Source of the DNA: Phallusia mammillata
Lineage: Eukaryota
Direction: 5' to 3'
NCBI GenBank assembly: GCA_965637545.1
Contig: OZ281494.1
Span: forward strand, 17,236,001 to 17,300,000
DNA: 64,000 nucleotides
Below are positions 49,607-64,000 of this stretch, piece after piece. The translations under genes were made by a program, and so were the position numbers. The notes beneath the pieces are model-generated. The model saw only the letters and a list, made by a program, of their open reading frames with translations, was not told the DNA's origin and did no database searches. Position 1 is the first letter of the stretch. Each line of letters opens with the position of its first letter.

Positions 49607-52310
49607 CAACAGCGATTCTTGTTCATTATAAGAAGGAAAATTGAAAAATTGAACTTTATTTTATCTCAAAGTACTGAATGCCTTTCTTAGATTAAACAAT
49701 GCTTAATTGCTCTAACAAAAAGGCAGTTACTTTTGTCAACTTGATTGTGATCTTGATGATTTCATCAGCGATATTTGCAGCAACAATCAGTTTGTACGGA
49801 AGATGCTGTTGTGACAACTTGTGCAAAATCAGTTTAGGCAGAAGTTTTGAAGTCTGTTTGATACTGACATATGTCAAGCCAGCCGTTTTTCATTACATTT
49901 TGTCTTCGGAAAGCTTTTTACAATTTGTTCTTGACCATCAGCAGCCTCGTTTGCCAATAGAATCGAAAAACATTGAAAAGTTAATAAGGAAGTTATGCAA
50001 TGCAAATTTTATCGTTCACATTGCTGCATGTGTTGTTTTTTGGACAAAACAAACATTTAGTCTTCTGTCAGCTCTAATGGTTTGCGGCATTTAGAGAAAC
50101 TGAAAACTTTTGGTCTGAAAAACTTCCAGTGGAAAGTGTCGGGAAAATGTTTATGTTGGAATTAAACTCTAAAGTGATCAACTGCTACAGGGATGTACAA
50201 CAAAGGGTCCATGGGTCAAATTTGGATCTCTATTGGTTAAAAATGGCCCACATAAACGGCGTATACTTAAACAAAAAATGTACAAACGTGGAGCCATATG
50301 TAGCGCTTTTAAGATGCATTTCAGTTCGTTTATTGTTTCTGTAAGCTGAAAACTTTGGAAATATACGTTCAGCTGAAGAGTGCAAAAGCTTTTTTTAACC
50401 ACTATGAAAACGTAATAACTTAAATCAGTTTATAAATTATAATTCAAATAGTTCTGTTGCCTAAAAAAGCCTTTATGCCCGAATTTTGAAAACCATGCAT
50501 TAGGTTAAATTGAGGATATACGTATACGTGGAATCCTATTTTAAATAACTGAAAATGTGTAATTTAGCCTATGATTTTTTAAGTTGTGCACCTATACTAC
50601 GTATCTCAAAAATGCGCCCAAAATAGAAAATTGCTAATGTGGAATGAAAAGTGAAAAAAACGATCCAGATTTAAACCAAGGTTGGAAAACAACTGGTGTC
50701 TAAAACAACCGATGTTCCATTAACGATATTGTGATTTTAACAAAATCGATAATTTTCGGTTGAAAAATAACTGTTGTAAAACGTGAAAAAATTTCTGTGT
50801 TGTATTTGAAGTAATATTCGTCGCGTTAAGAATATATGGATTACCATTGCTCCTATTTTTTATCACCAGTTACAAATAAAACGTCATGCTTCGTGCACAA
50901 TCCTACTGACTGGAAGTATTTCTGCTTGTTTGGGGGGAAAATGGAAAAGTAAACTTTCATTTGTGACCTAAGCTTTCCTTTTTTTCTGATGTACACATTC
51001 AGCTTTTAAACAAGTTACAACTTTTTTTTCGGGGGCTGCAAAATTTGTGTCAGAAACCTATAAAGTTTGAGGGCCATTTTCTGTTAGTGTGGCAACATGT
51101 GTAGTTTATAGCGCATTTTTGTCGTACTGCATGTCTACAAATCAACTTTGAACCAAGTCACATAAACATATCCTAAATTGAATCAACAAAAACGGAATCC
51201 ATCTGCATGACTCGTCCATATCAAATGACAACATCAATCATCGTGTTGTTTAAAAAAAATCGCAACGTTGTTGCTTTTAAGACAACATACATTTTTAATC
51301 AATAATTTTAACCCCGCTTGTGCTATTTGTGTGCTGGCCACTTTTGTTTGCACGCTTAAGCGGATACGAGAGCTTTGACAAACACAGAGGCCCAGAAAAT
51401 GCACAGAGTGGACACCGGCTGACGAAACGAAAAACACTCGGCGTTTTGAAATATGACGATTGTTGTTTTGGACCTGGACCGGACAGTTAAGTGAATGGCA
51501 AAAATTCACATTGTTTGAAGAGCGGCCGTCCAATGCGACATCTCTTCGACTTGGGATCGCGACTGAGTCTGTGCGTTTTTAACGCGCTGGAGAAACTACG
51601 AGGGCCCTCGAAAGCGTACTGCCGAGCATTAACAGTGGCCCCAGGGTTGCTACTCCCACAGAATGATCCTTTTATCCGCGCACTGGCACTCTACCTTTTT
51701 GTCTAATCGCGTTTTGCTACTTTTCGATCGCCAGTGCCAGGCAACGCGCTCGAACTGCGTTCGTTTAAATCACGCTTGGCTAAAGAGCTGTGACAGGAAA
51801 GTTGTAATGGATCAATGGTCATGCACAAACCGTCGCTCAAGGCTGAAAAGGTTATTTACTAAAAGTGCAGTGGCTGCGTTTAATAGCTATGTGAGTAATT
51901 CTTTGTTTTCATCAGTGTTTGCTTGCTACGTTTGCACGAGTTTTAGGAGGTTTAAACATATCACAGCTTTAAAAGAAAAGTTTCTAGCCTAGGCTGATAT
52001 AGTTGCATGTTAACATTAAAAAGTAGAAGATTGGTTATGTCCAAAATTTATACCCAGTAACGCAAAGTTAAGGGTAGATAGGCAAGCGTTGTTGAACGTT
52101 GTTTTTTTTTCACATTTTAAGCAGCCAAGTTTTGCAATGCCAGCAGTAGGCTACGAGACGTTATTCATATTTTATGAAACCCAAACCGTGCCATGGCATT
52201 TAATCGACAACGCATAGCTTTTCTTTTTCTCTAGGGCTACTAAATAATGCATTAACCTGTGAGCATACGTTAAGCCGTCATTGTTGTTGCTACCTTCAGA
52301 GACTTACAGT

Positions 52311-53792
52311 ATGTCGAAAAACGTTTTTGGCTCGTCGCAGTCGCCCGACTTGCTGTCACCCAATTTAAGAGTGAAAGCACAAAAGCGTCGTCGTACGAGG
52401 CTTGGAACAGGTGATACTGAACTAGAGAGATCGACACAAGAGCTGTTGACTGCGTTACGGGACCCGGTTATTAACCAAGGTTCTTCTTTGAAACCACTGC
52501 CTGCAATTTTAGCGAGTGAAAAGTCACATGCAAATAGACTTTTTGAAGGAGAGGCATTGGAAGATTTCACAGGCGACTCAATGAATAAAACGAACAACGA
52601 TAATGGTCAACAACAGCGTGTTTCCAGACGAAAAAGACTGGACCAATTGGAACGATGCCCAACTTTTACCAAAGAGTCAACAACAGAAAAGCAGATTATC
52701 AAAGACGACAGTCCTGTAAAGAATGGACTACAAGAAAAACTTAACATCAGCAGACAACGCAAAAATACCGACGACGCGTCCATTTTTTCTGATATGTCGG
52801 ACGAACTTGGGTTTGAAAAACGAACCAGAGGACGCAACAGCAGAAGAAGTCTAAATAATACCAAGAATTTCAGCTCAGACATCGATGGGATTCCAAAAGC
52901 GGTTGATTCCTTTTTAAATGCTCCAGAGCAGTCTACTGGGGGCTCAAAAACTTCCCGACGCCGTTTAACACGACGGGGTCGAAACAGTCCTGCAGTAGTT
53001 TCACCAATCGAAAAGCTAACCCTGCGCGATCGGTGTTCCCCTAATGTGACTGGAAGACAACGATCACTTGCATTCGATTCCACCTTAAGTTGTGGCGAGA
53101 ACAAAATCCATGGTAAACCGACTGTGGAAATTATACCGCAAAAAAACGCCCTGACATCGAAACCGTCAAAGTTGAGTCCGCTTGCAGACAACCAAGAATT
53201 AACAAAGTCCAATCTGCATACGCACGACACAGAGTATGACTTGACTCGACTGAGAAAGCCAAGACGGAGGCAGAACCGTTTACAAAATACCGAGTCAGTT
53301 CTAGATAAGTTGACTGATCGGGCCGCTTCTGACGTCATGAGTACAGTGTCAGGTGACGCATATGACCCAACTTTTACGGGAGCCACACGACCCGATGTAA
53401 ATTCCCGATTGCTGGGAGCATTGCGGAACTCCCATTTGGAAAAAGTCAGGGGAACACAACAGCAGAATGATGAAACGAGCGGAGATGACGTAAGCGTAGA
53501 TATTTTTACGTCACCCAAGCGCCACAAAAAGCGTTCGCGGCGACGTCACGAAGGGCAAGGGGAAAATTTTGACGCGGCCAAAGAAACGCAACAAGCAAGA
53601 AACTCCTCGTCTTTGTATTCTGGTACAGTCGGTGGTGACGAGAAGACCAAAAGTGAACATGTATTTGGCAATATTGGAAACGACTTAAACGGGAAATCAT
53701 CACAAAACGCTACCCATAACGTTTCTCCACGAAGGCGGGCGTATAACAAATATCTACCGCCATTATCGGAGTCCTTAAATAATTTTAAGTAA
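52311..53792 (+). CDS. Uncharacterised 493-aa S/R/K-rich disordered protein with a WH2-like motif
   Basis: A 1.5-kb open frame in AT-rich DNA. First true ATG is at 52311, just after acceptor-like AG sites; an upstream donor gtgagt at 51891 suggests a 5' exon. No family recognised. Confidence 0.75.
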   Translation: MSKNVFGSSQSPDLLSPNLRVKAQKRRRTRLGTGDTELERSTQELLTALRDPVINQGSSLKPLPAILASEKSHANRLFEGEALEDFTGDSMNKTNNDNGQQQRVSRRKRLDQLERCPTFTKESTTEKQIIKDDSPVKNGLQEKLNISRQRKNTDDASIFSDMSDELGFEKRTRGRNSRRSLNNTKNFSSDIDGIPKAVDSFLNAPEQSTGGSKTSRRRLTRRGRNSPAVVSPIEKLTLRDRCSPNVTGRQRSLAFDSTLSCGENKIHGKPTVEIIPQKNALTSKPSKLSPLADNQELTKSNLHTHDTEYDLTRLRKPRRRQNRLQNTESVLDKLTDRAASDVMSTVSGDAYDPTFTGATRPDVNSRLLGALRNSHLEKVRGTQQQNDETSGDDVSVDIFTSPKRHKKRSRRRHEGQGENFDAAKETQQARNSSSLYSGTVGGDEKTKSEHVFGNIGNDLNGKSSQNATHNVSPRRRAYNKYLPPLSESLNNFK

Positions 53793-55117
53793 TGGATTTA
53801 TCGTTAATGTTTGCTTTTCTACCTTGTAAAGGCATCTGAAAAAGTACTGACCGCTATACAGACACATATATAGCCTAATAAAGATTGTTTTCGAGAGTTT
53901 GAGTCTGTTTTTTAAGTCAGAGTCAGTTTTAGTCAGATTGTAAGTACAATCAGTTACCCAATATAAGTTTAAATCGTGAATTTGTTATGGATCTATGCAA
54001 CGACATTTGCTCCTTGAACATGAACAACTGCAAGAACCCACTGCAGGAGTGTAGTTGTACTTAATTCAACCATTTGGAAATACAAAAATCTATACGTTTA
54101 GCACGAGAAATAAAACGTCAGTGCATAGACTTCGTAGGTCTTTTCAGAAATCTGCCACGACTTGCGCAAATAAGATACAGCGAAATATTACGCACAAGCA
54201 CTTTCGAGACGGCAGTTCAATAGAAGAAAATGCACTCGGCCTTGAGCAAATGGCCCTTGACCTTGCCAATGCGCCGTTGCGGTTGAGCTGGCGTGCGCAC
54301 ACGAAGTGATATAGGTACACTTGGGCGATATGAGCAGTTTATCGATTTTCGGTGGTCATAATTTCGATGATACTTCCCGTTGCTTGGCAACTGGGCAACA
54401 GACGAAAAATAAACTGGTGCCAAGTGTTGTGCAGTAATTTTGCGTGATGTAAACAAAGTTTAGTTGCCACTGGTCACGGTGCGATCACATTGGGAGTTCA
54501 AAGCAGTTTTGGCCTTTTTTAATGTATTGGTACAGCTAATACACCTGATTGCATTATTATCTGGTTTGTAATTTGCAAAGAATCGCTATTTGCATAAACG
54601 GTCTTTTTATTTACAAAATTCGAATTAAACTTGTTGAAGACCGAGCTAACCTTTCTACATTTGCATCAATTATGTGTTTGTCGCAAATAACATGACCTAT
54701 AAAAAAGTAGGCTATTATTTATCCTGCCCGAATCGGTACATACTCTTACATAGTTACTCCATTGTTTAAGTTAACTTCTTCCTACAAACGTTTCGTTTTT
54801 GTTTGATGTATTTTGTGGAGAGGAATAAATCGTGAGAAAAGTGAGCATAAAGAAGCGCAAAAAATAAAAATGTCACATATGCTGATACATCGTGTACATG
54901 CAAAACACTTGAATTGTGTGTGATGGCACATATGCTGAAAATACATCTTGCAAATGCTCAACAAATAAGAGTAATAAAAACTGAAATGGTCATCGATATG
55001 TCAGTCACGTGATGTGAAACACCCGTCGTTGATAAACTGGTTTGTGATGAATCACTGGCCTTCCAAGAATTCGGGACCAATGGTTTATAACTTTGGTTCT
55101 TTGCCAGTAATTTTAAC

Positions 55118-55435
55118 TCAAGAAGAATTTCGCCTTCTGTGCGTTCTTACACGATGTCGATGTCTCCTTCGCCTGGTTTGTGATTGGTCCTGTCTTTCTT
55201 TGTCTTTTTGACTTGCGTGCCTCAACATGGCTGACAAATGTTCAACTGGAATATTCAGTGACAAAGGTCGTTCATGCGTTGTGGAATTTGTCATTTCCTG
55301 TTGCAATCTTACGCTTCTTAACTTTTTAAGTAAGTGTTTCATGCTGGACGCGTCACTTTGAGCGGGTTTGCTGTTTGCTTGAATAAGTATCGACAAAAGC
55401 AGAACGAGCACCAAGTAGTGCTTGCCTAATTCCAT
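55118..55435 (-). CDS. CRH/urocortin/diuretic-hormone-like prepropeptide (105 aa as read)
   Basis: Signal peptide (HYLVLVLLLSILIQANS), KK and RSVR processing sites, then RPLSLNIPVEHLSAMLRHASQKDKERQ. This aligns without gaps to urocortin 2 IVLSLDVPIGLLQILLEQARARAAREQ (recalled sequence). Confidence 0.78.
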   Translation of the reverse strand: MELGKHYLVLVLLLSILIQANSKPAQSDASSMKHLLKKLRSVRLQQEMTNSTTHERPLSLNIPVEHLSAMLRHASQKDKERQDQSQTRRRRHRHRVRTHRRRNSS

Positions 55436-55679
55436 AAATTCAGGCTGTGTGTCCGGAATGGCTTGTTACTCAGCACGACCTACTTGTTTTCCACCAATAT
55501 TCCATTAGTTAAGATTTCCTAAGAAACTTATAAAAATCCAAAATGGTTAGGACGATTCAAACCTTACAAACTTCAATGCCCATGCTTTCTCTACTAAGTG
55601 AATCTTTCTCATCTAGCTAATGCCAGAAATGGCCAATACTTACTAACTAACGACTACACAGTAGAGATTTTGCTTCGAG

Positions 55680-55960
55680 CAAATACAACAGCTGAACTAG
55701 TTTTGGCCACCGGTGACGATTATCAGCTCCCAGACTGCCGGCATTTTACCCTTTTAGGCAACGACGGAACCAAGCCCAAGCGGCCCAGCTCAAATACTTG
55801 TGGTCATGCCCTAGAGATACGCGGAATGCCTCTTCCCATCCATCAACGACAAGACACAGACCCGGTCTGCCCTAATTGCAGTAAAACCGCCTGTGCAGGA
55901 GAAACCTATCACGCACGGTCGACCGCGGAACACCTTACCCAGAAAAAAGTTAAATCCTGA
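55680..55960 (+). mobile_element. Possible non-LTR retrotransposon 3' relic
   Basis: TCGHALE..DTDPVCPNC..ETYH resembles the TGH..DPxCxxC..ETxxH C-terminal zinc-finger region of I/R1-type ORF2. No reverse transcriptase motif seen. Confidence 0.4.
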
Positions 55961-56219
55961 AAGCCCACCATCAGCAGGTCGCCGGGCAGCCTACAATTTA
56001 CTGCCATGTAAATATATGTGCGGCTCATCATCCCTCTGTGGTTTGCGTTTGGCAAACATTCGACGCTCCGGGCAAAACATCCGGCGGATTAGCCTCATGA
56101 ATACAGGCGCCCACAATTCAGGCAGGACTGGTTCGCACACAATGCTACGATTGTCCGATGGGTAATCGGAAGATGAAAGAGTGAACAGAAAGGCTTATCC
56201 ATGGAATATCCATCTACAC

Positions 56220-56487
56220 CAGTGGTTCCAACCCGTTTCAGGTCATGGATCACCAGTTCGAATAAATGAATATTGTGGCCCAGTCCATTGTTAAGTAAGG
56301 ACAAGGAAAGCATCCACAAGCATATTGGCTTAAAACATATTCCTTCAATAAAAAATTGACATCAAACATCAATTTTAGAAGTATGGGGAAGTGATATCAA
56401 ACAACTAACAGCTAACAAACAAATAGCCTATAACTCGGACAAGGTTTTTTTCTTATTGCATTATATGCATCCATTTGAGAACCACTG
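56220..56487. mobile_element. hAT MITE, 268 bp, between the CRH-like gene and CRHBP
   Basis: TIRs CAGTGGTTC-CAA / TTGAGAACCACTG. Perfect 8-bp TSD ATCTACAC (56212-56219, 56488-56495). Confidence 0.92.
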
Positions 56488-57249
56488 ATCTACACTACAT
56501 ACCTTCAAACATTAGAATTTCTGTTGGATACCACAGAGGCAAAAAACGAGTGATGTGTTACCGTTTTTTAAAATGTGTTTGTACGTTTTTGATGATGTGT
56601 TTACCCAGTCTGTTTTGATATTGAGTAACCACACCTCGTTTCTGCACGATAACGACAAGCCCAACTTTAAACAAATCACTATTAAATGCTGGCTGAATTA
56701 ATCTTATCGAAGTGACTTTATGATCGTTAATGAAGCGCAATTCAATTGAAATTTGTGTATAAATGGCATTTTTTTATGTGATAAATCATCCTGAAACCAA
56801 AATACAACAAAAAAGAATATTACGCAAAAGGCAGGTGCTAATGTTGGTAAAAAAAAGTTACACAAAAAACGTGATTATTTTTTATCGATACATGCTTTAA
56901 AGTTGTTTGTAGTCTCAACCACTTAAACAAAGTTGGGAATGTTTGCTTTACAAAAGCATGGAATCCGGTTTTGTTTACGCTTTTTGTGCATATCCTTGAA
57001 ACGGGATCAAGGTCACTTGCAAAAAGAACTATGAGCTGATTGGTGGAAGACGTGGGCGTGAATGGGATCATAGTGGGGCGGAAAATTGCACATATTTATT
57101 GAAACGTATTTTGCAACCACCCGTCAGCCGCAAATTTCACCTGCAAACTTTTAGAATGGAGTAGTGGCATTCGAGGAGTTTCATTGGAGAGTGTACATCG
57201 TTTTATCTTCTGTTCCCACCGGTTTTATACTTACAAGTTTCGTGACAAA

Positions 57250-59551
57250 ATGATTCAAATTACAGTTTTATTTATACTCGTTTGGAAAACGGCAGTTGGA
57301 GCCGACGTAAGTAAAATGTAACTTTTAAAATTGGTTTAGACTTTTACAAGCGGAAAGTGTTGGCTTATTCGCTACGTTAACGTTACAATTGTAACCTTTG
57401 GAATGCCGTAGTTGAAGATTTTGGTTTTCTTTTAGAATGTTTTGAGTGATTCAAACTATCTTACACTGCCCGGACCATCTCTTGTAACAGTTCCTGGATT
57501 CGTAGACGTTCGTGAGTTGGGTGAGTTGTTGTCTGTTTTGTCTTATAAAACTTTAAATTCGTCTGGTGGGTCTTCAAACAGTTGTCAGAAAACTAAAATC
57601 TTATAAATTACTTGCATATTTGTTTAAATGATAATTAGGTTGCGCGTGTTCAAATGGCGTTCAGCATTGTGTTCGGTACTAACTAACTGGATGACATTGA
57701 ACACTGTTATATGCGTCTTGTTATACGCAGTTCTTAACTTACATATGATTTGAGTGATTTTGAACTTAACAAACCACGAAAAAATAACTTCATTTTCTTA
57801 ATATAACCTGTTTTTTCTCTTCTGCTGCAACTGCTTTCCTGTATAAACATTAGTTAATAAATTCTTTCTCTATTTGTCTCTGACTTTTGTTTGTCAACGG
57901 TATATGCAGAATGCATCGACATGATAAAAGTCAATTCGGATTTGAATTTTGAGCAAGAGGAAGAAGCACGCGTTCTGTGTGGTGCTTACTTTATCGGCGA
58001 TGCTGACGAACTTCTCTCGTTGGAAGTTCACGGTGTCGACATTAACTGCGACCAGGGAGAATTTGTTGAAGTAGGAGTTTGTGAAAATCTATGGATTAAT
58101 ACCTATATAAAAAAATTTCCTCATTTAATGGATGTTTGAAGAGAAAATGAATACGTTATTAGGTGTGTTGAGTGATTTCATCATTTTTGCATTGGGCACT
58201 TTTTCACTAACAATGAATTGCACTTCTAATTGTACTAACATATCCTAAAACAAATAAGTTCAAACTACAATCTGCTTGTTATTAGAAGAAACGATTTATG
58301 CTTTTTATCTGTTTTTATGAAACAGTCCAATATTATCCTGATCAGAAGCAAGAATCTTTCTTTTTTTTATACATTTTATTGTCTGCGGGAGATTCGTTTA
58401 ATAACAAAACTGTTTCAGCTGCTTGTGTCCAATTCAGATATTCGATGGATGGATGGCGCGTGACCGTTTCCTTCCTAGCGAGGAGGATCATGAGCATTCC
58501 CTAAACACCAGACTAAAAGACTATTGCAGCCACCAGAGAGCACACCAAAACGCTCCCTGGCAGTTCACATCAATGCAGAATTTTGCTCTCGTTCAGTTTC
58601 GTCTATTAGCAGGAAGCCGACTGTCTATTCGGTTTCGTAGACTTAAGTCGACAAATGGTGGGTAAATGTATTTGAAAGTTCACCAGCGCCTTACAACTTC
58701 TACTTTGTTTGACCAACAGAGTGTAATGTAGCAAATGCAGTGAAATGTTGTTTTGTTATGCAACTTAGGTGCTGTTACGTGGCTACACTATCATACACGC
58801 CAAATGTATTGTCACCAGCTGCACTGATGAGACTGTTTAGGTCCAAACACTGTGCAGTGTCTGCAGCTAACGTATAAGAGATATTACAACAATTTTTATG
58901 ACCTGTTGCAGAACAGTGCAACATATTGACACCTGACGATGAGGGAGAATATAAAATGACATCCAACGTGGAAAAGAATTGCACATTTTCGATTTTACAG
59001 GCATCGGTTCTCATCATCAAAGAAATTAAATTGTCACAAGTTGGTATAGTTAACATTAAAACACAATCAACAAAGATTTAATTAGATTTTATAATTCAAC
59101 TTTCATGCAGATTTTTGTAATATTTTTAGGATAATTTACAATCGAATAAAGGTACAGTCGAAGTTTTGAAAGGAGACTCGCTTGATCCTTCTGCCATGAC
59201 GTTGGTGCAAAAATTTGAAGCTCCAATCCACGAAAACGGTTAGATTTTTTCCAAGCTGGTTTTATTAATGTTAATGAAGTAACCACTGTTTTAGTTATGG
59301 ACAACTAGTTTTACTTTTACAACAAATCAAGCGTTAAAATGGCATTTTTATGCCGATTGAAAGCGCAAAACCGTTTCGCACATTTAAATTTACAACTAGA
59401 ATTGTTCTTTGCAGCTGAAAGGAAATTGATACTTGACAAAGTTCACGCCGCAGTGCGTATGACGTCACCAGGTCACAGTGGCAACTTCATTCGCTTCGCC
59501 TATTCAAGGTTGGCTGACGAAGAAGCTCTGAAGGCCGAACTTTGCACGTGA
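57250..59551 (+). CDS. CRHBP: Corticotropin-releasing hormone-binding protein, 298 aa
   Basis: Exons 57250-57306, 57436-57520, 57910-58070, 58438-58657, 58912-59039, 59130-59238, 59415-59551; phase-consistent (897 nt). Signal peptide; ECIDM..LCGAYFI..INCDQGEFVEIFDGW..FLPSEEDH..DYC..QNFALVQFR..QCNI..NCTFSI..VEVLKGDSLDPSAM..VRMTSPG, colinear with vertebrate CRHBP. The exon 5 donor is the least certain junction. Confidence 0.93.
58817..58868 (+). ncRNA. Hammerhead motif of the same family as 30137-30188, with G12-to-C core change, in CRHBP intron 4
   Basis: AGCUGCA CUGAUGA GACU-GUUUA-GGUC CAAA CACUG-UG-CAGUG UC UGCAGCU. Confidence 0.85.
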
Positions 59552-60440
59552 CCCTTGTGTGACGGGTTGTACAGTGAATAAAATTATTTCAGTGTCATTT
59601 TGTTCTTTAAGGTGCGATAACACGCTTATAAGGCCGCAAATAAATGCCATCATAATTGTTTGTTTACTGATGACAGCTTGTAAGGATCGAACCTTGTAAA
59701 TAAACCTGTTCTAACTGATATTACCTTTGCTTTTGAACAAGGATCAATAAACAGAGATGCGTTGTTAATTACAATTTAGTTTTTTTTTCAAATGTCATTT
59801 AAAAAGGCTAAAATGTATCAAAGTCAAGAGTTAGGTGGATTCACATACCGAGTCAAGCTTTTGTTTACAGTTGTGTTTCATTTTACACATCTGCAAAAAG
59901 CAGTGTGTTAGAAAGGACTGCGGATTTCGCTAAAAACCGTCGAGAGTTTCTAGTAAACTTGTATTTCTTCAGCAGCAGTCAAAATTTACCCTCAAAACAA
60001 ACGAGCAAGGGACGTTTATTTGAACGAATAGAAAGCTACTGCATGACAAACGACAGCAACGGCCGGTTTTGTTGAGGTGATGGGAGATTTCTTGTTGCAC
60101 AAATAAGTTGCACCACATCGACACAATAAATTCCAACAATGGTTTACTTTGCTTCAAACATTTTTATAATTTACTACGTCCCGAAATTGTCGGTTTTCGG
60201 AAAACGCCTTGTTGGGTAATCTTTAGGGGCTCAAATATATTTTTTAATTTACTGACAAAGCTTTATTTCGGGTAAAACAGCACAAAAGTCGCTCCTGAGC
60301 AAAAGCACCTTGTGTGGAAAAAACAGCAATGGAAATATTTTTCAACTGAAAAGATTTAATCTCAGTTATTGTTAGTGTAAGCTGATTCTTTAGATGGAAT
60401 AGGGGCTGAAAACTTGACAGTGACGTTATGCTTTGTGACA

Positions 60441-64000
<3,560 letters not shown>

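What the first reader, a model, noticed from the sequence alone, without database searches (positions are those of the whole stretch)
55118..59551. CRH-family ligand gene head-to-head with its binding protein (CRHBP)
Seen: a secreted precursor with the CRH/urocortin signature (PLSLNIPxxxLxxMLxxA..Q after RSVR) on the minus strand and a complete 7-exon CRHBP on the plus strand, with divergent ATGs 1815 bp apart. Established: CRH-BP sequesters CRH-family peptides; human CRH and CRHBP are on different chromosomes; a CRF/diuretic-hormone-like peptide is known from Ciona. I know of no report of this linkage but could not search. Inference: a co-regulated hormone-plus-buffer module on a shared bidirectional promoter, either ancestral in chordates or lineage-specific.
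Basis: partly seen in the sequence, partly recalled or inferred. Interest (0 to 1): 0.9.

Follow-up and report, generated by a model that had tools for sequence, protein, structure and literature searches.

The report
CRH-like peptide gene beside CRHBP
In this tunicate genome a genuine gene for the stress-hormone binding protein CRHBP sits head-to-head with a small, transcribed gene for a secreted peptide that probably, but not provably, descends from the CRH/urocortin family and has lost that family's receptor-binding tail; the pairing is absent from every other CRHBP locus I could fetch.

Summary
The anatomy is real. The plus strand holds a 7-exon, 299-aa CRHBP (Pfam CRF-BP_N on exons 3 and 4; 47% identical to Clavelina CRHBP-like). 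On the minus strand, with its ATG 1815 bp away, is an intronless 105-aa ORF with a signal peptide and basic cleavage sites. RNA contigs cover this ORF colinearly (54927-55527). Its CRH-family identity is sub-threshold. Pfam CRF gives no hit, a PROSITE-like pattern matches at chance level, and own HMMER and Smith-Waterman tests give P about 0.01. hhalign against a CRF-family alignment gives P 4.4e-4 (probability 34%), a score reached by 0 of 2000 shuffles and 0 of 1681 natural ORF decoys. The amidated C-terminal tail that defines the family is missing: a 15-residue Arg/His block and a TGA stop replace it. A tail-like "VKIT-GK" lies in frame just after the stop. No CRH-like ORF flanks CRHBP in Clavelina, Styela, two other tunicate-like contigs or three insect-like contigs. 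The RNA runs that hold the peptide transcript show no CRHBP exons, and the 1.7-kb spacer carries repeats. Verdict: CRHBP is certain; a divergent, truncated CRH-like neighbour has about 0.55 probability; a shared promoter and an ancestral module are not supported.

The parts
54927..55527 (-). Transcribed unit of the small peptide gene. Strand is inferred from the ORF, because contigs carry no direction.
   Evidence: The 601-nt contig of RNA run X1 is colinear with 0 mismatches. X2 contigs lie on 54987-55252 and 55341-55512. Neighbouring unique DNA has zero depth in the same runs.
55118..55435 (-). Intronless ORF of 105 aa plus a TGA stop: the precursor of a secreted peptide.
   Evidence: It is the longest ORF in any frame of the transcript.
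55370..55435 (-). Predicted signal peptide, residues 1-22 (MELGKHYLVLVLLLSILIQANS).
   Evidence: Read directly from the sequence: n-, h- and c-region pattern. No predictor was run.
55175..55306 (-). Predicted 44-residue peptide, residues 44-87, lying between RSVR and RRRR.
   Evidence: Sequence. The cleavage sites are inferred from furin/prohormone-convertase rules.
55205..55273 (-). CRH/urocortin-like core, residues 55-77 (ERPLSLNIPVEHLSAMLRHASQK).
   Evidence: hhalign places it on columns 3-25 of CRF-family alignment A2: score 22.5, P 4.4e-4, probability 34%. 0 of 2000 shuffles and 0 of 1681 natural decoys reach that score.
55130..55174 (-). Arg/His-rich block, residues 88-102 (RRRRHRHRVRTHRRR), where the family has its hydrophobic receptor-binding tail.
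   Evidence: Sequence. Removing it in silico makes the profile match run end to end (a post hoc step).
55118..55120 (-). TGA stop codon, present in both DNA and RNA contigs.
   Evidence: no differing letters in X1, X2 or X3.
55085..55117 (-). In-frame post-stop codons VKITGKEPKL followed by TAA. With the preceding NSS they give N-x7-GK, the spacing of the CRH-family amide tail.
   Evidence: Scored against a CRH/UCN tail matrix, 20 of 1080 decoy ORF ends do as well (P about 0.02).
55528..57249 (.). Spacer between the peptide transcript and the CRHBP ATG. It holds a GC-rich single-copy block (about 55600-56160) and a multi-copy repeat (56110-56471).
   Evidence: (X3 depth 1500-2100 against a baseline of 119). 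No Rfam hit.
57250..57306 (+). CRHBP exon 1: ATG and signal peptide.
   Evidence: GT donor.
57436..57520 (+). CRHBP exon 2.
   Evidence: aligns with Clavelina CRHBP-like.
57910..58070 (+). CRHBP exon 3.
   Evidence: Pfam CRF-BP_N, 38 bits.
58438..58657 (+). CRHBP exon 4.
   Evidence: Pfam CRF-BP_N, 36.6 bits. 53% identical to Clavelina XP_076817707.
58912..59039 (+). CRHBP exon 5. An alternative donor at 59043 paired with an acceptor at 59152 would give 293 aa.
   Evidence: CRF-BP_C, weak. The length comparison with Clavelina favours the 299-aa model.
59130..59238 (+). CRHBP exon 6.
59415..59551 (+). CRHBP exon 7 with stop. It ends ...ELCT, as in Clavelina.
60465..63998 (-). Exons of the downstream PH/MyTH4/FERM gene. 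It is the same downstream neighbour as in Clavelina, which anchors orthology of the CRHBP locus.
   Evidence: tblastx with L001 13674-16925; the Clavelina gene call carries PH, MyTH4 and FERM domains.

Best explanation
The plus-strand gene is the orthologue of tunicate and vertebrate CRHBP. Its head-to-head neighbour is a real, transcribed, single-exon gene for a 105-residue secreted precursor. I read this precursor as a strongly diverged member or derivative of the CRH/urocortin/diuretic-hormone family. Its residues 55-77 keep the family's N-terminal 'P-L-S-L-(D/N)-(L/I)-(P/T)' motif and the start of the central helix. The C-terminal third, which in the family binds the receptor ectodomain and ends in an amide, has been replaced by a 15-residue Arg/His block and cut off by a TGA stop. 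A remnant of the old tail (N-x7-GK) may still lie in frame across and beyond the stop. Expected processing, which is inferred: signal peptidase, then convertase cleavage at RSVR and RRRR, giving a non-amidated peptide of about 44 residues. The pairing with CRHBP is specific to this lineage rather than an ancient chordate module. Nothing shows that the two genes share a promoter or are co-expressed. Shown: both genes, transcription of the peptide gene, the calibrated profile similarity, and the absence of the pairing elsewhere. Inferred: homology, processing, and any binding to CRHBP.
For: CRHBP: Pfam CRF-BP_N on exons 3 and 4. The best library matches are the CRHBP-like proteins of Clavelina, Ciona and Styela, at 47, 36 and 31% identity over the full length. 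The downstream neighbour is conserved with Clavelina. Peptide gene: colinear RNA contigs with silent flanks, and it is the longest ORF of the transcript. CRH likeness: MAFFT places CRH, UCN1, UCN2 and DH44 on residues 53-95. hhalign gives score 22.5, P 4.4e-4, probability 34%, reached by 0 of 2000 shuffles and 0 of 1681 natural ORF decoys, the next best scoring 16.2. Smith-Waterman against single peptides gives sauvagine P 0.002, UCN2 0.004, UCN3 0.006, family-wise 0.016, all in one register. With the Arg/His block removed and X at the stop, the match runs end to end including GK: 28.3, P 2e-5, probability 77%. Architecture fits the family: signal peptide, peptide near the C-terminus, and the whole precursor on one exon, as reported for vertebrate and Ciona CRH-like genes (PMC7406891). 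Context: being the immediate neighbour of CRHBP raises the prior. Lineage-specific pairing.
Against: Pfam CRF gives no hit at E<=10. The PROSITE-like pattern matches at chance level. HMMER models give only 0.9-4 bits, and with shorter decoys included five random ORF segments out-score the ORF. The protein-language-model search puts CRF clusters only at rank 22, score 0.67. No homologue of the ORF exists in 5.8 billion proteins, the PDB or JGI metagenomes, so there is no conservation evidence at all. There is no amidation signal in frame. The 'insertion plus stop' reading is post hoc, and the tail alone has P of only about 0.02. Shuffles do not model the amphipathic-helix periodicity that unrelated helical peptide hormones share, so the true null is wider than the one I tested. 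I could not obtain the Ciona CDLP sequence for a direct comparison.
Confidence: 0.55

Rival explanations
1. The neighbour is an unrelated, lineage-restricted orphan gene for a small cationic secreted peptide. Its likeness to CRH is a chance match of a short Leu/Ser-rich helical segment, and its position beside CRHBP is coincidence.
For: No Pfam CRF hit. Chance-level pattern match. HMMER scores sit in the noise range. No homologues anywhere. No amide signal in frame. An Arg/His-rich tail is foreign to the family. The pairing is not seen at seven other CRHBP loci. Semmens et al. (PMC4772807) document that earlier 'CRH-type' calls in echinoderms were wrong and warn against family assignment from sequence alone.
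Against: The hhalign score is unmatched by 2000 shuffles and 1681 natural decoys. All pairwise alignments fall in one register, starting at the family's most conserved motif. The N-x7-GK spacing lies just past the stop. It is a considerable coincidence that such an ORF is the immediate neighbour of CRHBP.
Confidence: 0.33
2. One reading: a functional CRH-family hormone and its buffer, co-regulated from one bidirectional promoter as a hormone-plus-binding-protein module.
For: Head-to-head orientation with ATGs 1815 bp apart. The peptide gene is expressed. Sub-threshold CRH likeness.
Against: CRHBP exons have no RNA contig in the two runs that hold the peptide transcript (contigs show presence, not absence, so this point is weak). 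The spacer is about 1.7 kb and holds a multi-copy repeat, which is longer than typical bidirectional promoters (under 1 kb; from general knowledge). The receptor-binding amide tail is missing. The arrangement is not conserved in Clavelina, Styela or the other loci.
Confidence: 0.08
3. The ORF is not translated. The 601-nt RNA would be a non-coding or promoter-associated transcript upstream of CRHBP, and the ORF is incidental.
For: There is no canonical AATAAA on the minus strand near the 3' end. Contigs carry no strand. A short upstream ORF precedes the ATG. There is no conservation evidence.
Against: A 105-codon ATG-initiated ORF fills half of a 601-nt RNA. It has a textbook signal peptide and basic cleavage sites. 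It is the longest ORF in all six frames.
Confidence: 0.04

Closest known systems
Vertebrate CRH / urocortin 1-3 / sauvagine / urotensin I and insect DH44 (Pfam CRF, PF00473)
   Same: A secreted precursor with the peptide near its C-terminus and the whole precursor on one exon. The N-terminal motif P-L-S-L-N-I-P-V..L matches P-(P/S)-(I/L)-S-(L/I)-D-(L/V)-(T/P). The Leu and Ala of the central helix are kept: S59, L67, L71 and A74 are invariant in alignment A1.
   Different: No Pfam hit. The C-terminal 'N-R-x-(L/I)-(L/M)-x-x-(I/V)-amide' tail is absent in frame and replaced by RRRRHRHRVRTHRRR and a stop. There is no Gly-Lys/Arg amidation signal before the stop. Thirteen residues carrying an N-glycosylation sequon lie between the RSVR site and the motif.
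Ciona CRF/diuretic-hormone-like peptide (CDLP; Lovejoy & Barsyte-Lovejoy 2010; D'Aquila et al. 2016, as cited in PMC6861216 and PMC7406891)
   Same: A tunicate, single-copy, single-exon CRH-like precursor. This is the expected orthologue class.
   Different: Its sequence and genomic neighbours could not be retrieved with these tools, so orthology is untested. Cardoso et al. 2020 report no synteny conserved with vertebrates around it and do not mention CRHBP.
CRHBP (Pfam CRF-BP_N / CRF-BP_C), annotated as 'CRF-binding protein-like' in Clavelina, Ciona and Styela
   Same: Domain content, length of about 300 aa, seven coding exons (as in the human gene, from general knowledge), signal peptide, and the conserved downstream neighbour shared with Clavelina.
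   Different: Tunicate proteins have 7-8 Cys, against 10-11 in the beetle and another invertebrate homologue, so the C-terminal-domain disulfides appear to be lost. The Styela gene is intronless.
CRF(6-33), the synthetic CRHBP-selective ligand (from general knowledge: Behan et al. 1995)
   Same: If the 44-mer is CRH-derived, it keeps the region that corresponds to the binding-protein-binding core and lacks the receptor-ectodomain-binding C-terminus.
   Different: This is purely an analogy. The ARAE-type residues that bind human CRHBP are not conserved here (only A74 aligns), and no binding was tested.

Membership tests
CRF/urocortin/DH family (Pfam PF00473, PROSITE PS00511) | Significant match to the curated family profile | tested here: not met
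   hmmscan against Pfam-A finds no CRF hit at E<=10 for the whole ORF, for residues 44-87, 44-105 or 55-91.
CRF/urocortin/DH family (Pfam PF00473, PROSITE PS00511) | N-terminal signature [PQA]-x-[LIVM]-S-[LIVM]-x2-[PST]-[LIVMF]-x-[LIVM]-L-R-x2-[LIVM] (pattern recalled from memory) | tested here: not met
   RPLSLNIPVEHLSAML has 3 of 10 defined positions wrong. 27 six-frame sites in the window match as well or better.
CRF/urocortin/DH family (Pfam PF00473, PROSITE PS00511) | Remote profile-profile similarity in the correct register | tested here: inconclusive
   hhalign: P 4.4e-4, probability 34%, 23 columns. No shuffle (0 of 2000) or natural decoy (0 of 1681) reaches the score. HMMER and Smith-Waterman give P of about 0.01-0.06.
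CRF/urocortin/DH family (Pfam PF00473, PROSITE PS00511) | C-terminal amidation signal (Gly followed by basic residues) ending a peptide of about 38-46 residues | tested here: not met
   There is no Gly before the RRRR site or before the stop. A GK lies 5 codons after the TGA, in frame. The stop is present in both DNA and RNA contigs.
CRF/urocortin/DH family (Pfam PF00473, PROSITE PS00511) | Precursor architecture: signal peptide, peptide at the C-terminal end, precursor on a single exon | tested here: met
   ORF layout. The colinear RNA contig shows no splicing across the ORF. The single-exon rule is stated in PMC7406891.
CRF/urocortin/DH family (Pfam PF00473, PROSITE PS00511) | Activates a CRH/DH44-type class B1 receptor, or binds CRHBP | not testable with these tools
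   This needs synthetic peptide and receptor or binding-protein assays.
CRHBP (Pfam PF05428 CRF-BP_N + PF23541 CRF-BP_C) | Profile match above the curated cut-off | tested here: met
   CRF-BP_N scores 38.0 and 36.6 bits on exons 3 and 4 (cut-off 25). CRF-BP_C is weak on exon 5, E 0.054.
CRHBP (Pfam PF05428 CRF-BP_N + PF23541 CRF-BP_C) | Orthology to named CRHBP genes (best matches and synteny) | tested here: met
   The best representatives are the Clavelina, Ciona and Styela CRF-binding protein-like proteins. Full-length alignment gives 47, 36 and 31% identity. The downstream PH/MyTH4/FERM gene is shared with Clavelina.
CRHBP (Pfam PF05428 CRF-BP_N + PF23541 CRF-BP_C) | Expression and correct splicing of the seven exons | tested here: inconclusive
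   No RNA contig of runs X1, X2 or X5 lies on any CRHBP exon. The splice sites are predicted from GT-AG and from homology only.
Bidirectional-promoter gene pair | Divergent transcription start sites less than about 1 kb apart, with correlated expression | tested here: not met
   At least about 1.7 kb separates the peptide transcript's end (55527) from the CRHBP ATG (57250), and a repeat lies inside the gap. The peptide RNA is present and CRHBP RNA is absent in the same runs. The absence evidence is weak, because contigs show presence only.

The most novel reading that the evidence does not exclude
A tunicate lineage has turned a CRH-like gene into a naturally truncated peptide. The peptide keeps the N-terminal and central segment, which in vertebrate CRF contacts CRHBP, but has lost the amidated receptor-binding tail. 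Its gene now sits next to CRHBP. The product would then act on the binding protein, as a competitor or partner, rather than on the receptor: an endogenous counterpart of the synthetic CRF(6-33).
Probability: 0.1. Interest if true: 0.75.

Novelty: new variant of a known kind. Interest (0 to 1): 0.42.

Why it matters
CRH-family peptides and CRHBP form an old bilaterian hormone and buffer pair whose genes are unlinked in vertebrates. A tunicate in which a CRH-like gene lies directly beside CRHBP would give a compact, testable locus for asking how a hormone and its binding protein are coordinated, and it would add a second tunicate CRH-like sequence type. If the peptide really is a tail-less derivative, it would be a natural experiment separating binding-protein binding from receptor binding. 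As things stand the value is modest. The family assignment is sub-threshold, the pairing is not conserved even among tunicates, and co-regulation has no support.

Tried and rejected
1. Splicing of the ORF at the internal GTAAGA (55150 region) to reach a downstream exon. Rejected: the RNA contig is colinear through it.
2. Homologues of the ORF. None were found in the 5.8-billion-protein index, PDB or JGI metagenome contigs. tblastn on the Clavelina, Styela and L003 loci gave only noise. The best hit (L001 14888-14977) is an exon of the downstream FERM gene.
3. My last protein search, with a CRF-plus-ORF alignment, was meant to pull out tunicate CRH-like precursors. It returned only the top 120 hits, all vertebrate CRH/UCN1. 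They were useful as tool-given family sequences but gave no tunicate sequence.
4. The Ciona CRHBP locus. Three exact-protein look-ups were not on record.
5. The Ciona CDLP sequence. Lovejoy 2010 and Mirabeau & Joly 2013 are not held. The supplements and reviews I read contain no sequence.
6. The protein-language-model atlas gave only generic small-hormone look-alikes. CRF appeared at rank 22, score 0.67.
7. Rfam and tRNA scans of the window and of the spacer found nothing. There are no internal repeats in 54000-60500.
8. The upstream 503-aa ORF (52281-53792) has no Pfam, PDB or atlas identity.
9. TGA read as selenocysteine or read through. This was considered and not pursued: there is no supporting feature, and both DNA and RNA carry the stop.


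Full report
OBSERVATION. The region was read and ORFs were listed. On the minus strand, 55118-55435 encodes a 105-residue ORF. It has a hydrophobic N-terminus (MELGKHYLVLVLLLSILIQANS), a furin-type RSVR at residues 40-43, and the string ERPLSLNIPVEHLSAMLRHASQKDKERQDQSQT. An Arg/His block (RRRRHRHRVRTHRRR) follows, then NSS and a TGA stop.

On the plus strand I assembled seven GT-AG exons: 57250-57306, 57436-57520, 57910-58070, 58438-58657, 58912-59039, 59130-59238 and 59415-59551. They encode 299 aa. An alternative exon 5/6 junction (59043/59152) gives 293 aa, but alignment with the Clavelina protein favours 299.

CRHBP IS REAL.
- Pfam CRF-BP_N hits exon 3 (38.0 bits) and exon 4 (36.6 bits), both above the 25-bit cut-off. 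CRF-BP_C is weak on exon 5.
- An exhaustive phmmer search with exon 4 found as best representatives proteins that their sources name corticotropin-releasing factor-binding protein-like. These come from Clavelina lepadiformis (53% identity on the exon), Ciona intestinalis (45%) and Styela clava (39%).
- Full-length identity is 47, 36 and 31% respectively.
- The Clavelina locus (L001) shares the downstream PH/MyTH4/FERM gene on the opposite strand (L001 13674-16925 against window 60465-63998). The locus is therefore orthologous.
- The window's organism is a tunicate that is none of these three species. Its name is coded in the run table.

THE NEIGHBOUR IS A REAL, EXPRESSED GENE. Two runs labelled RNA (the label is a guess, marked 'RNA?' in the run table) come from a study (P1, 2020) different from that of the DNA runs (P2, 2024).
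- Run X1 has a 601-nt contig on 54927-55527 with no mismatch and no gap.
- Run X2 has contigs on 54987-55252 and 55341-55512.
- In the same runs the unique flanking DNA (54300-54842, 55567-56109, 56472-58281, 59006-59700) has zero depth. The signal is therefore transcription and not DNA carry-over.
- The contig is colinear, so the precursor sits on one exon, and the internal GTAAGA is not used as a donor.
- The 105-aa ORF is the longest in all six frames of this RNA.
- The strand is inferred from the ORF. No canonical AATAAA lies near the 3' end.

IS IT A CRH-FAMILY PEPTIDE? Curated tests fail.
- Pfam CRF gives nothing at E<=10 for the ORF or for peptide-sized pieces.
- A PROSITE-style pattern, recalled from memory, has 3 of 10 defined positions wrong. 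27 six-frame sites in the window do as well.
- The ORF has no detectable relative in the 5.8-billion-protein index, in PDB or in JGI metagenome contigs.
- The protein-language-model atlas returns only generic small-hormone precursors, with CRF clusters at rank 22, score 0.67.

I then built my own tests. The family sequences were:
- human CRH, UCN1, UCN2 and UCN3, typed and then verified residue by residue against PDB chains;
- CRH/UCN1 peptides cut from proteins returned;
- a few invertebrate and amphibian peptides from memory, flagged as such.

HMMER models give 0.9-4.0 bits. 154 of 20000 shuffles and 0 of 527 long natural ORFs reach the best model's score. With shorter decoys included, five random segments out-score the ORF.

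Smith-Waterman against single peptides gives sauvagine P 0.002, UCN2 0.004 and UCN3 0.006, with a family-wise P of 0.016. All alignments fall in one register, starting at PLSL.

Profile-profile comparison is clearer. hhalign of alignment A2 against the ORF aligns residues 55-77 to profile columns 3-25, with score 22.5, P 4.4e-4 and probability 34%. I calibrated this score:
- 0 of 2000 composition-matched shuffles reach it; the best scores 20.5.
- Among 1681 natural stop-to-stop ORF segments from the window and five other loci, this ORF ranks first. The next best scores 16.2.

The resemblance is therefore beyond chance for a single planned comparison, yet far below what a database search would accept. 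Shuffles also do not model the helical periodicity that unrelated peptide hormones share.

THE MISSING TAIL. The family's C-terminal third, ending N-R-x-(L/I)-(L/M)-x-x-(I/V)-Gly-Lys, has no in-frame counterpart. The frame continues VKITGKEPKL and then TAA. NSS-stop-VKIT-GK therefore has exactly the N-x7-GK spacing of the family.

With the 15-residue Arg/His block removed and X at the stop, hhalign aligns the ORF to the whole profile, including GK: score 28.3, P 2e-5, probability 77%. This edit is post hoc. Scored alone against a CRH/UCN tail matrix, 20 of 1080 decoy ORF ends do as well (P about 0.02).

The stop is present in DNA contigs and in the independent RNA contigs. As expressed, the product therefore lacks the tail.

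WEIGHING. Before looking at similarity, the chance that a given neighbour of CRHBP is a CRH-like gene is very small, about 1e-4 to 1e-3. Several things raise it: the secreted-precursor architecture, the single exon, the calibrated profile match and the tail remnant. By my rough likelihood-ratio estimate they bring it to about even odds or somewhat better.

I put descent from the CRH/urocortin/DH family at about 0.55, and an unrelated orphan secreted peptide at about 0.33.

LINKAGE AND CO-REGULATION.
- In Clavelina the head-to-head neighbour of CRHBP is a guanylate-binding-protein gene about 2 kb away.
- In Styela the upstream gene is a DEAD-box helicase on the same strand.
- In two tunicate-like ENA contigs the upstream gene is an aldolase.
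- Three further contigs are insect-like, judged by their closest CRHBP.
- None of these flanks holds an ORF resembling the window's peptide or the CRF profile.
- The Ciona locus could not be fetched.

The pairing is therefore not an ancestral chordate or tunicate feature, as far as 5-10 kb flanks and single-exon ORFs can show.

For co-regulation there is no positive evidence. The RNA runs that hold the peptide transcript hold no CRHBP exon. Only short repeat-derived pieces lie in the spacer and in introns 3 and 4. The gap from 55527 to 57250 is about 1.7 kb. It includes a repeat whose DNA depth is 13-18 times baseline.

LITERATURE.
- A single CRH-like gene is described in Ciona (CDLP; Lovejoy & Barsyte-Lovejoy 2010, Mirabeau & Joly 2013, D'Aquila 2016), as cited in PMC7406891, PMC7481443 and PMC6861216.
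- Cardoso et al. 2020 state that its precursor is on one exon. They found no vertebrate-like synteny around it and do not mention CRHBP.
- My searches found no paper reporting CRH-CRHBP linkage.
- Semmens et al. 2016 warn that earlier 'CRH-type' assignments in echinoderms were mistaken. They note that sequence alone can mislead.

VERDICT. CRHBP is certain. The neighbour is a transcribed secreted-peptide gene that is more likely than not a diverged, tail-less CRH-like derivative. The shared promoter and the ancient module are not supported.

Noticed in passing
L002 10001-11002 (Styela clava OZ123515.1): The Styela CRHBP-like gene is called as a single 333-codon exon. The window's gene has seven exons, and the Clavelina gene spans 2.9 kb with exon-spaced matches. 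This suggests intron loss or a retrocopy in Styela.
   Followed up: no
window CRHBP model; alignment: Tunicate CRHBPs have 7-8 cysteines, against 10-11 in a beetle and an unidentified invertebrate homologue. The cysteines of the C-terminal domain are missing, which suggests lost disulfides in the tunicate lineage.
   Followed up: partly
window 55600-56160: A GC-rich (about 52%), single-copy block sits in an otherwise 37% GC spacer. It carries plus-strand ORFs of 120 and 90 aa. It has no Pfam or Rfam match and no RNA coverage.
   Followed up: partly
window 56110-56471, 58277-58421, 58797-58833: There are multi-copy repeats in the spacer and in CRHBP introns 3 and 4. DNA word depth reaches up to about 14000 against a baseline of about 119. 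RNA contigs from other copies touch them with loose ends.
   Followed up: no
window 55455-55490 (minus strand): A short upstream ORF (ATG GAA TAT TGG ... TGA, 11 codons) lies in the 5' leader of the peptide transcript.
   Followed up: no
L003 and L004 (ENA ERZ21736675, ERZ22157276): Two long contigs from metagenome assemblies carry a fructose-bisphosphate aldolase gene upstream of a CRHBP whose closest relative is the Clavelina protein. They look like unlabelled tunicate DNA with a shared aldolase-CRHBP synteny that differs from both the window and Clavelina.
   Followed up: partly
window 52281-53792 (+): A 503-codon open frame lies upstream of the peptide gene. It has no Pfam, PDB or atlas identity, and its features resemble disordered nuclear proteins.
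   Followed up: partly
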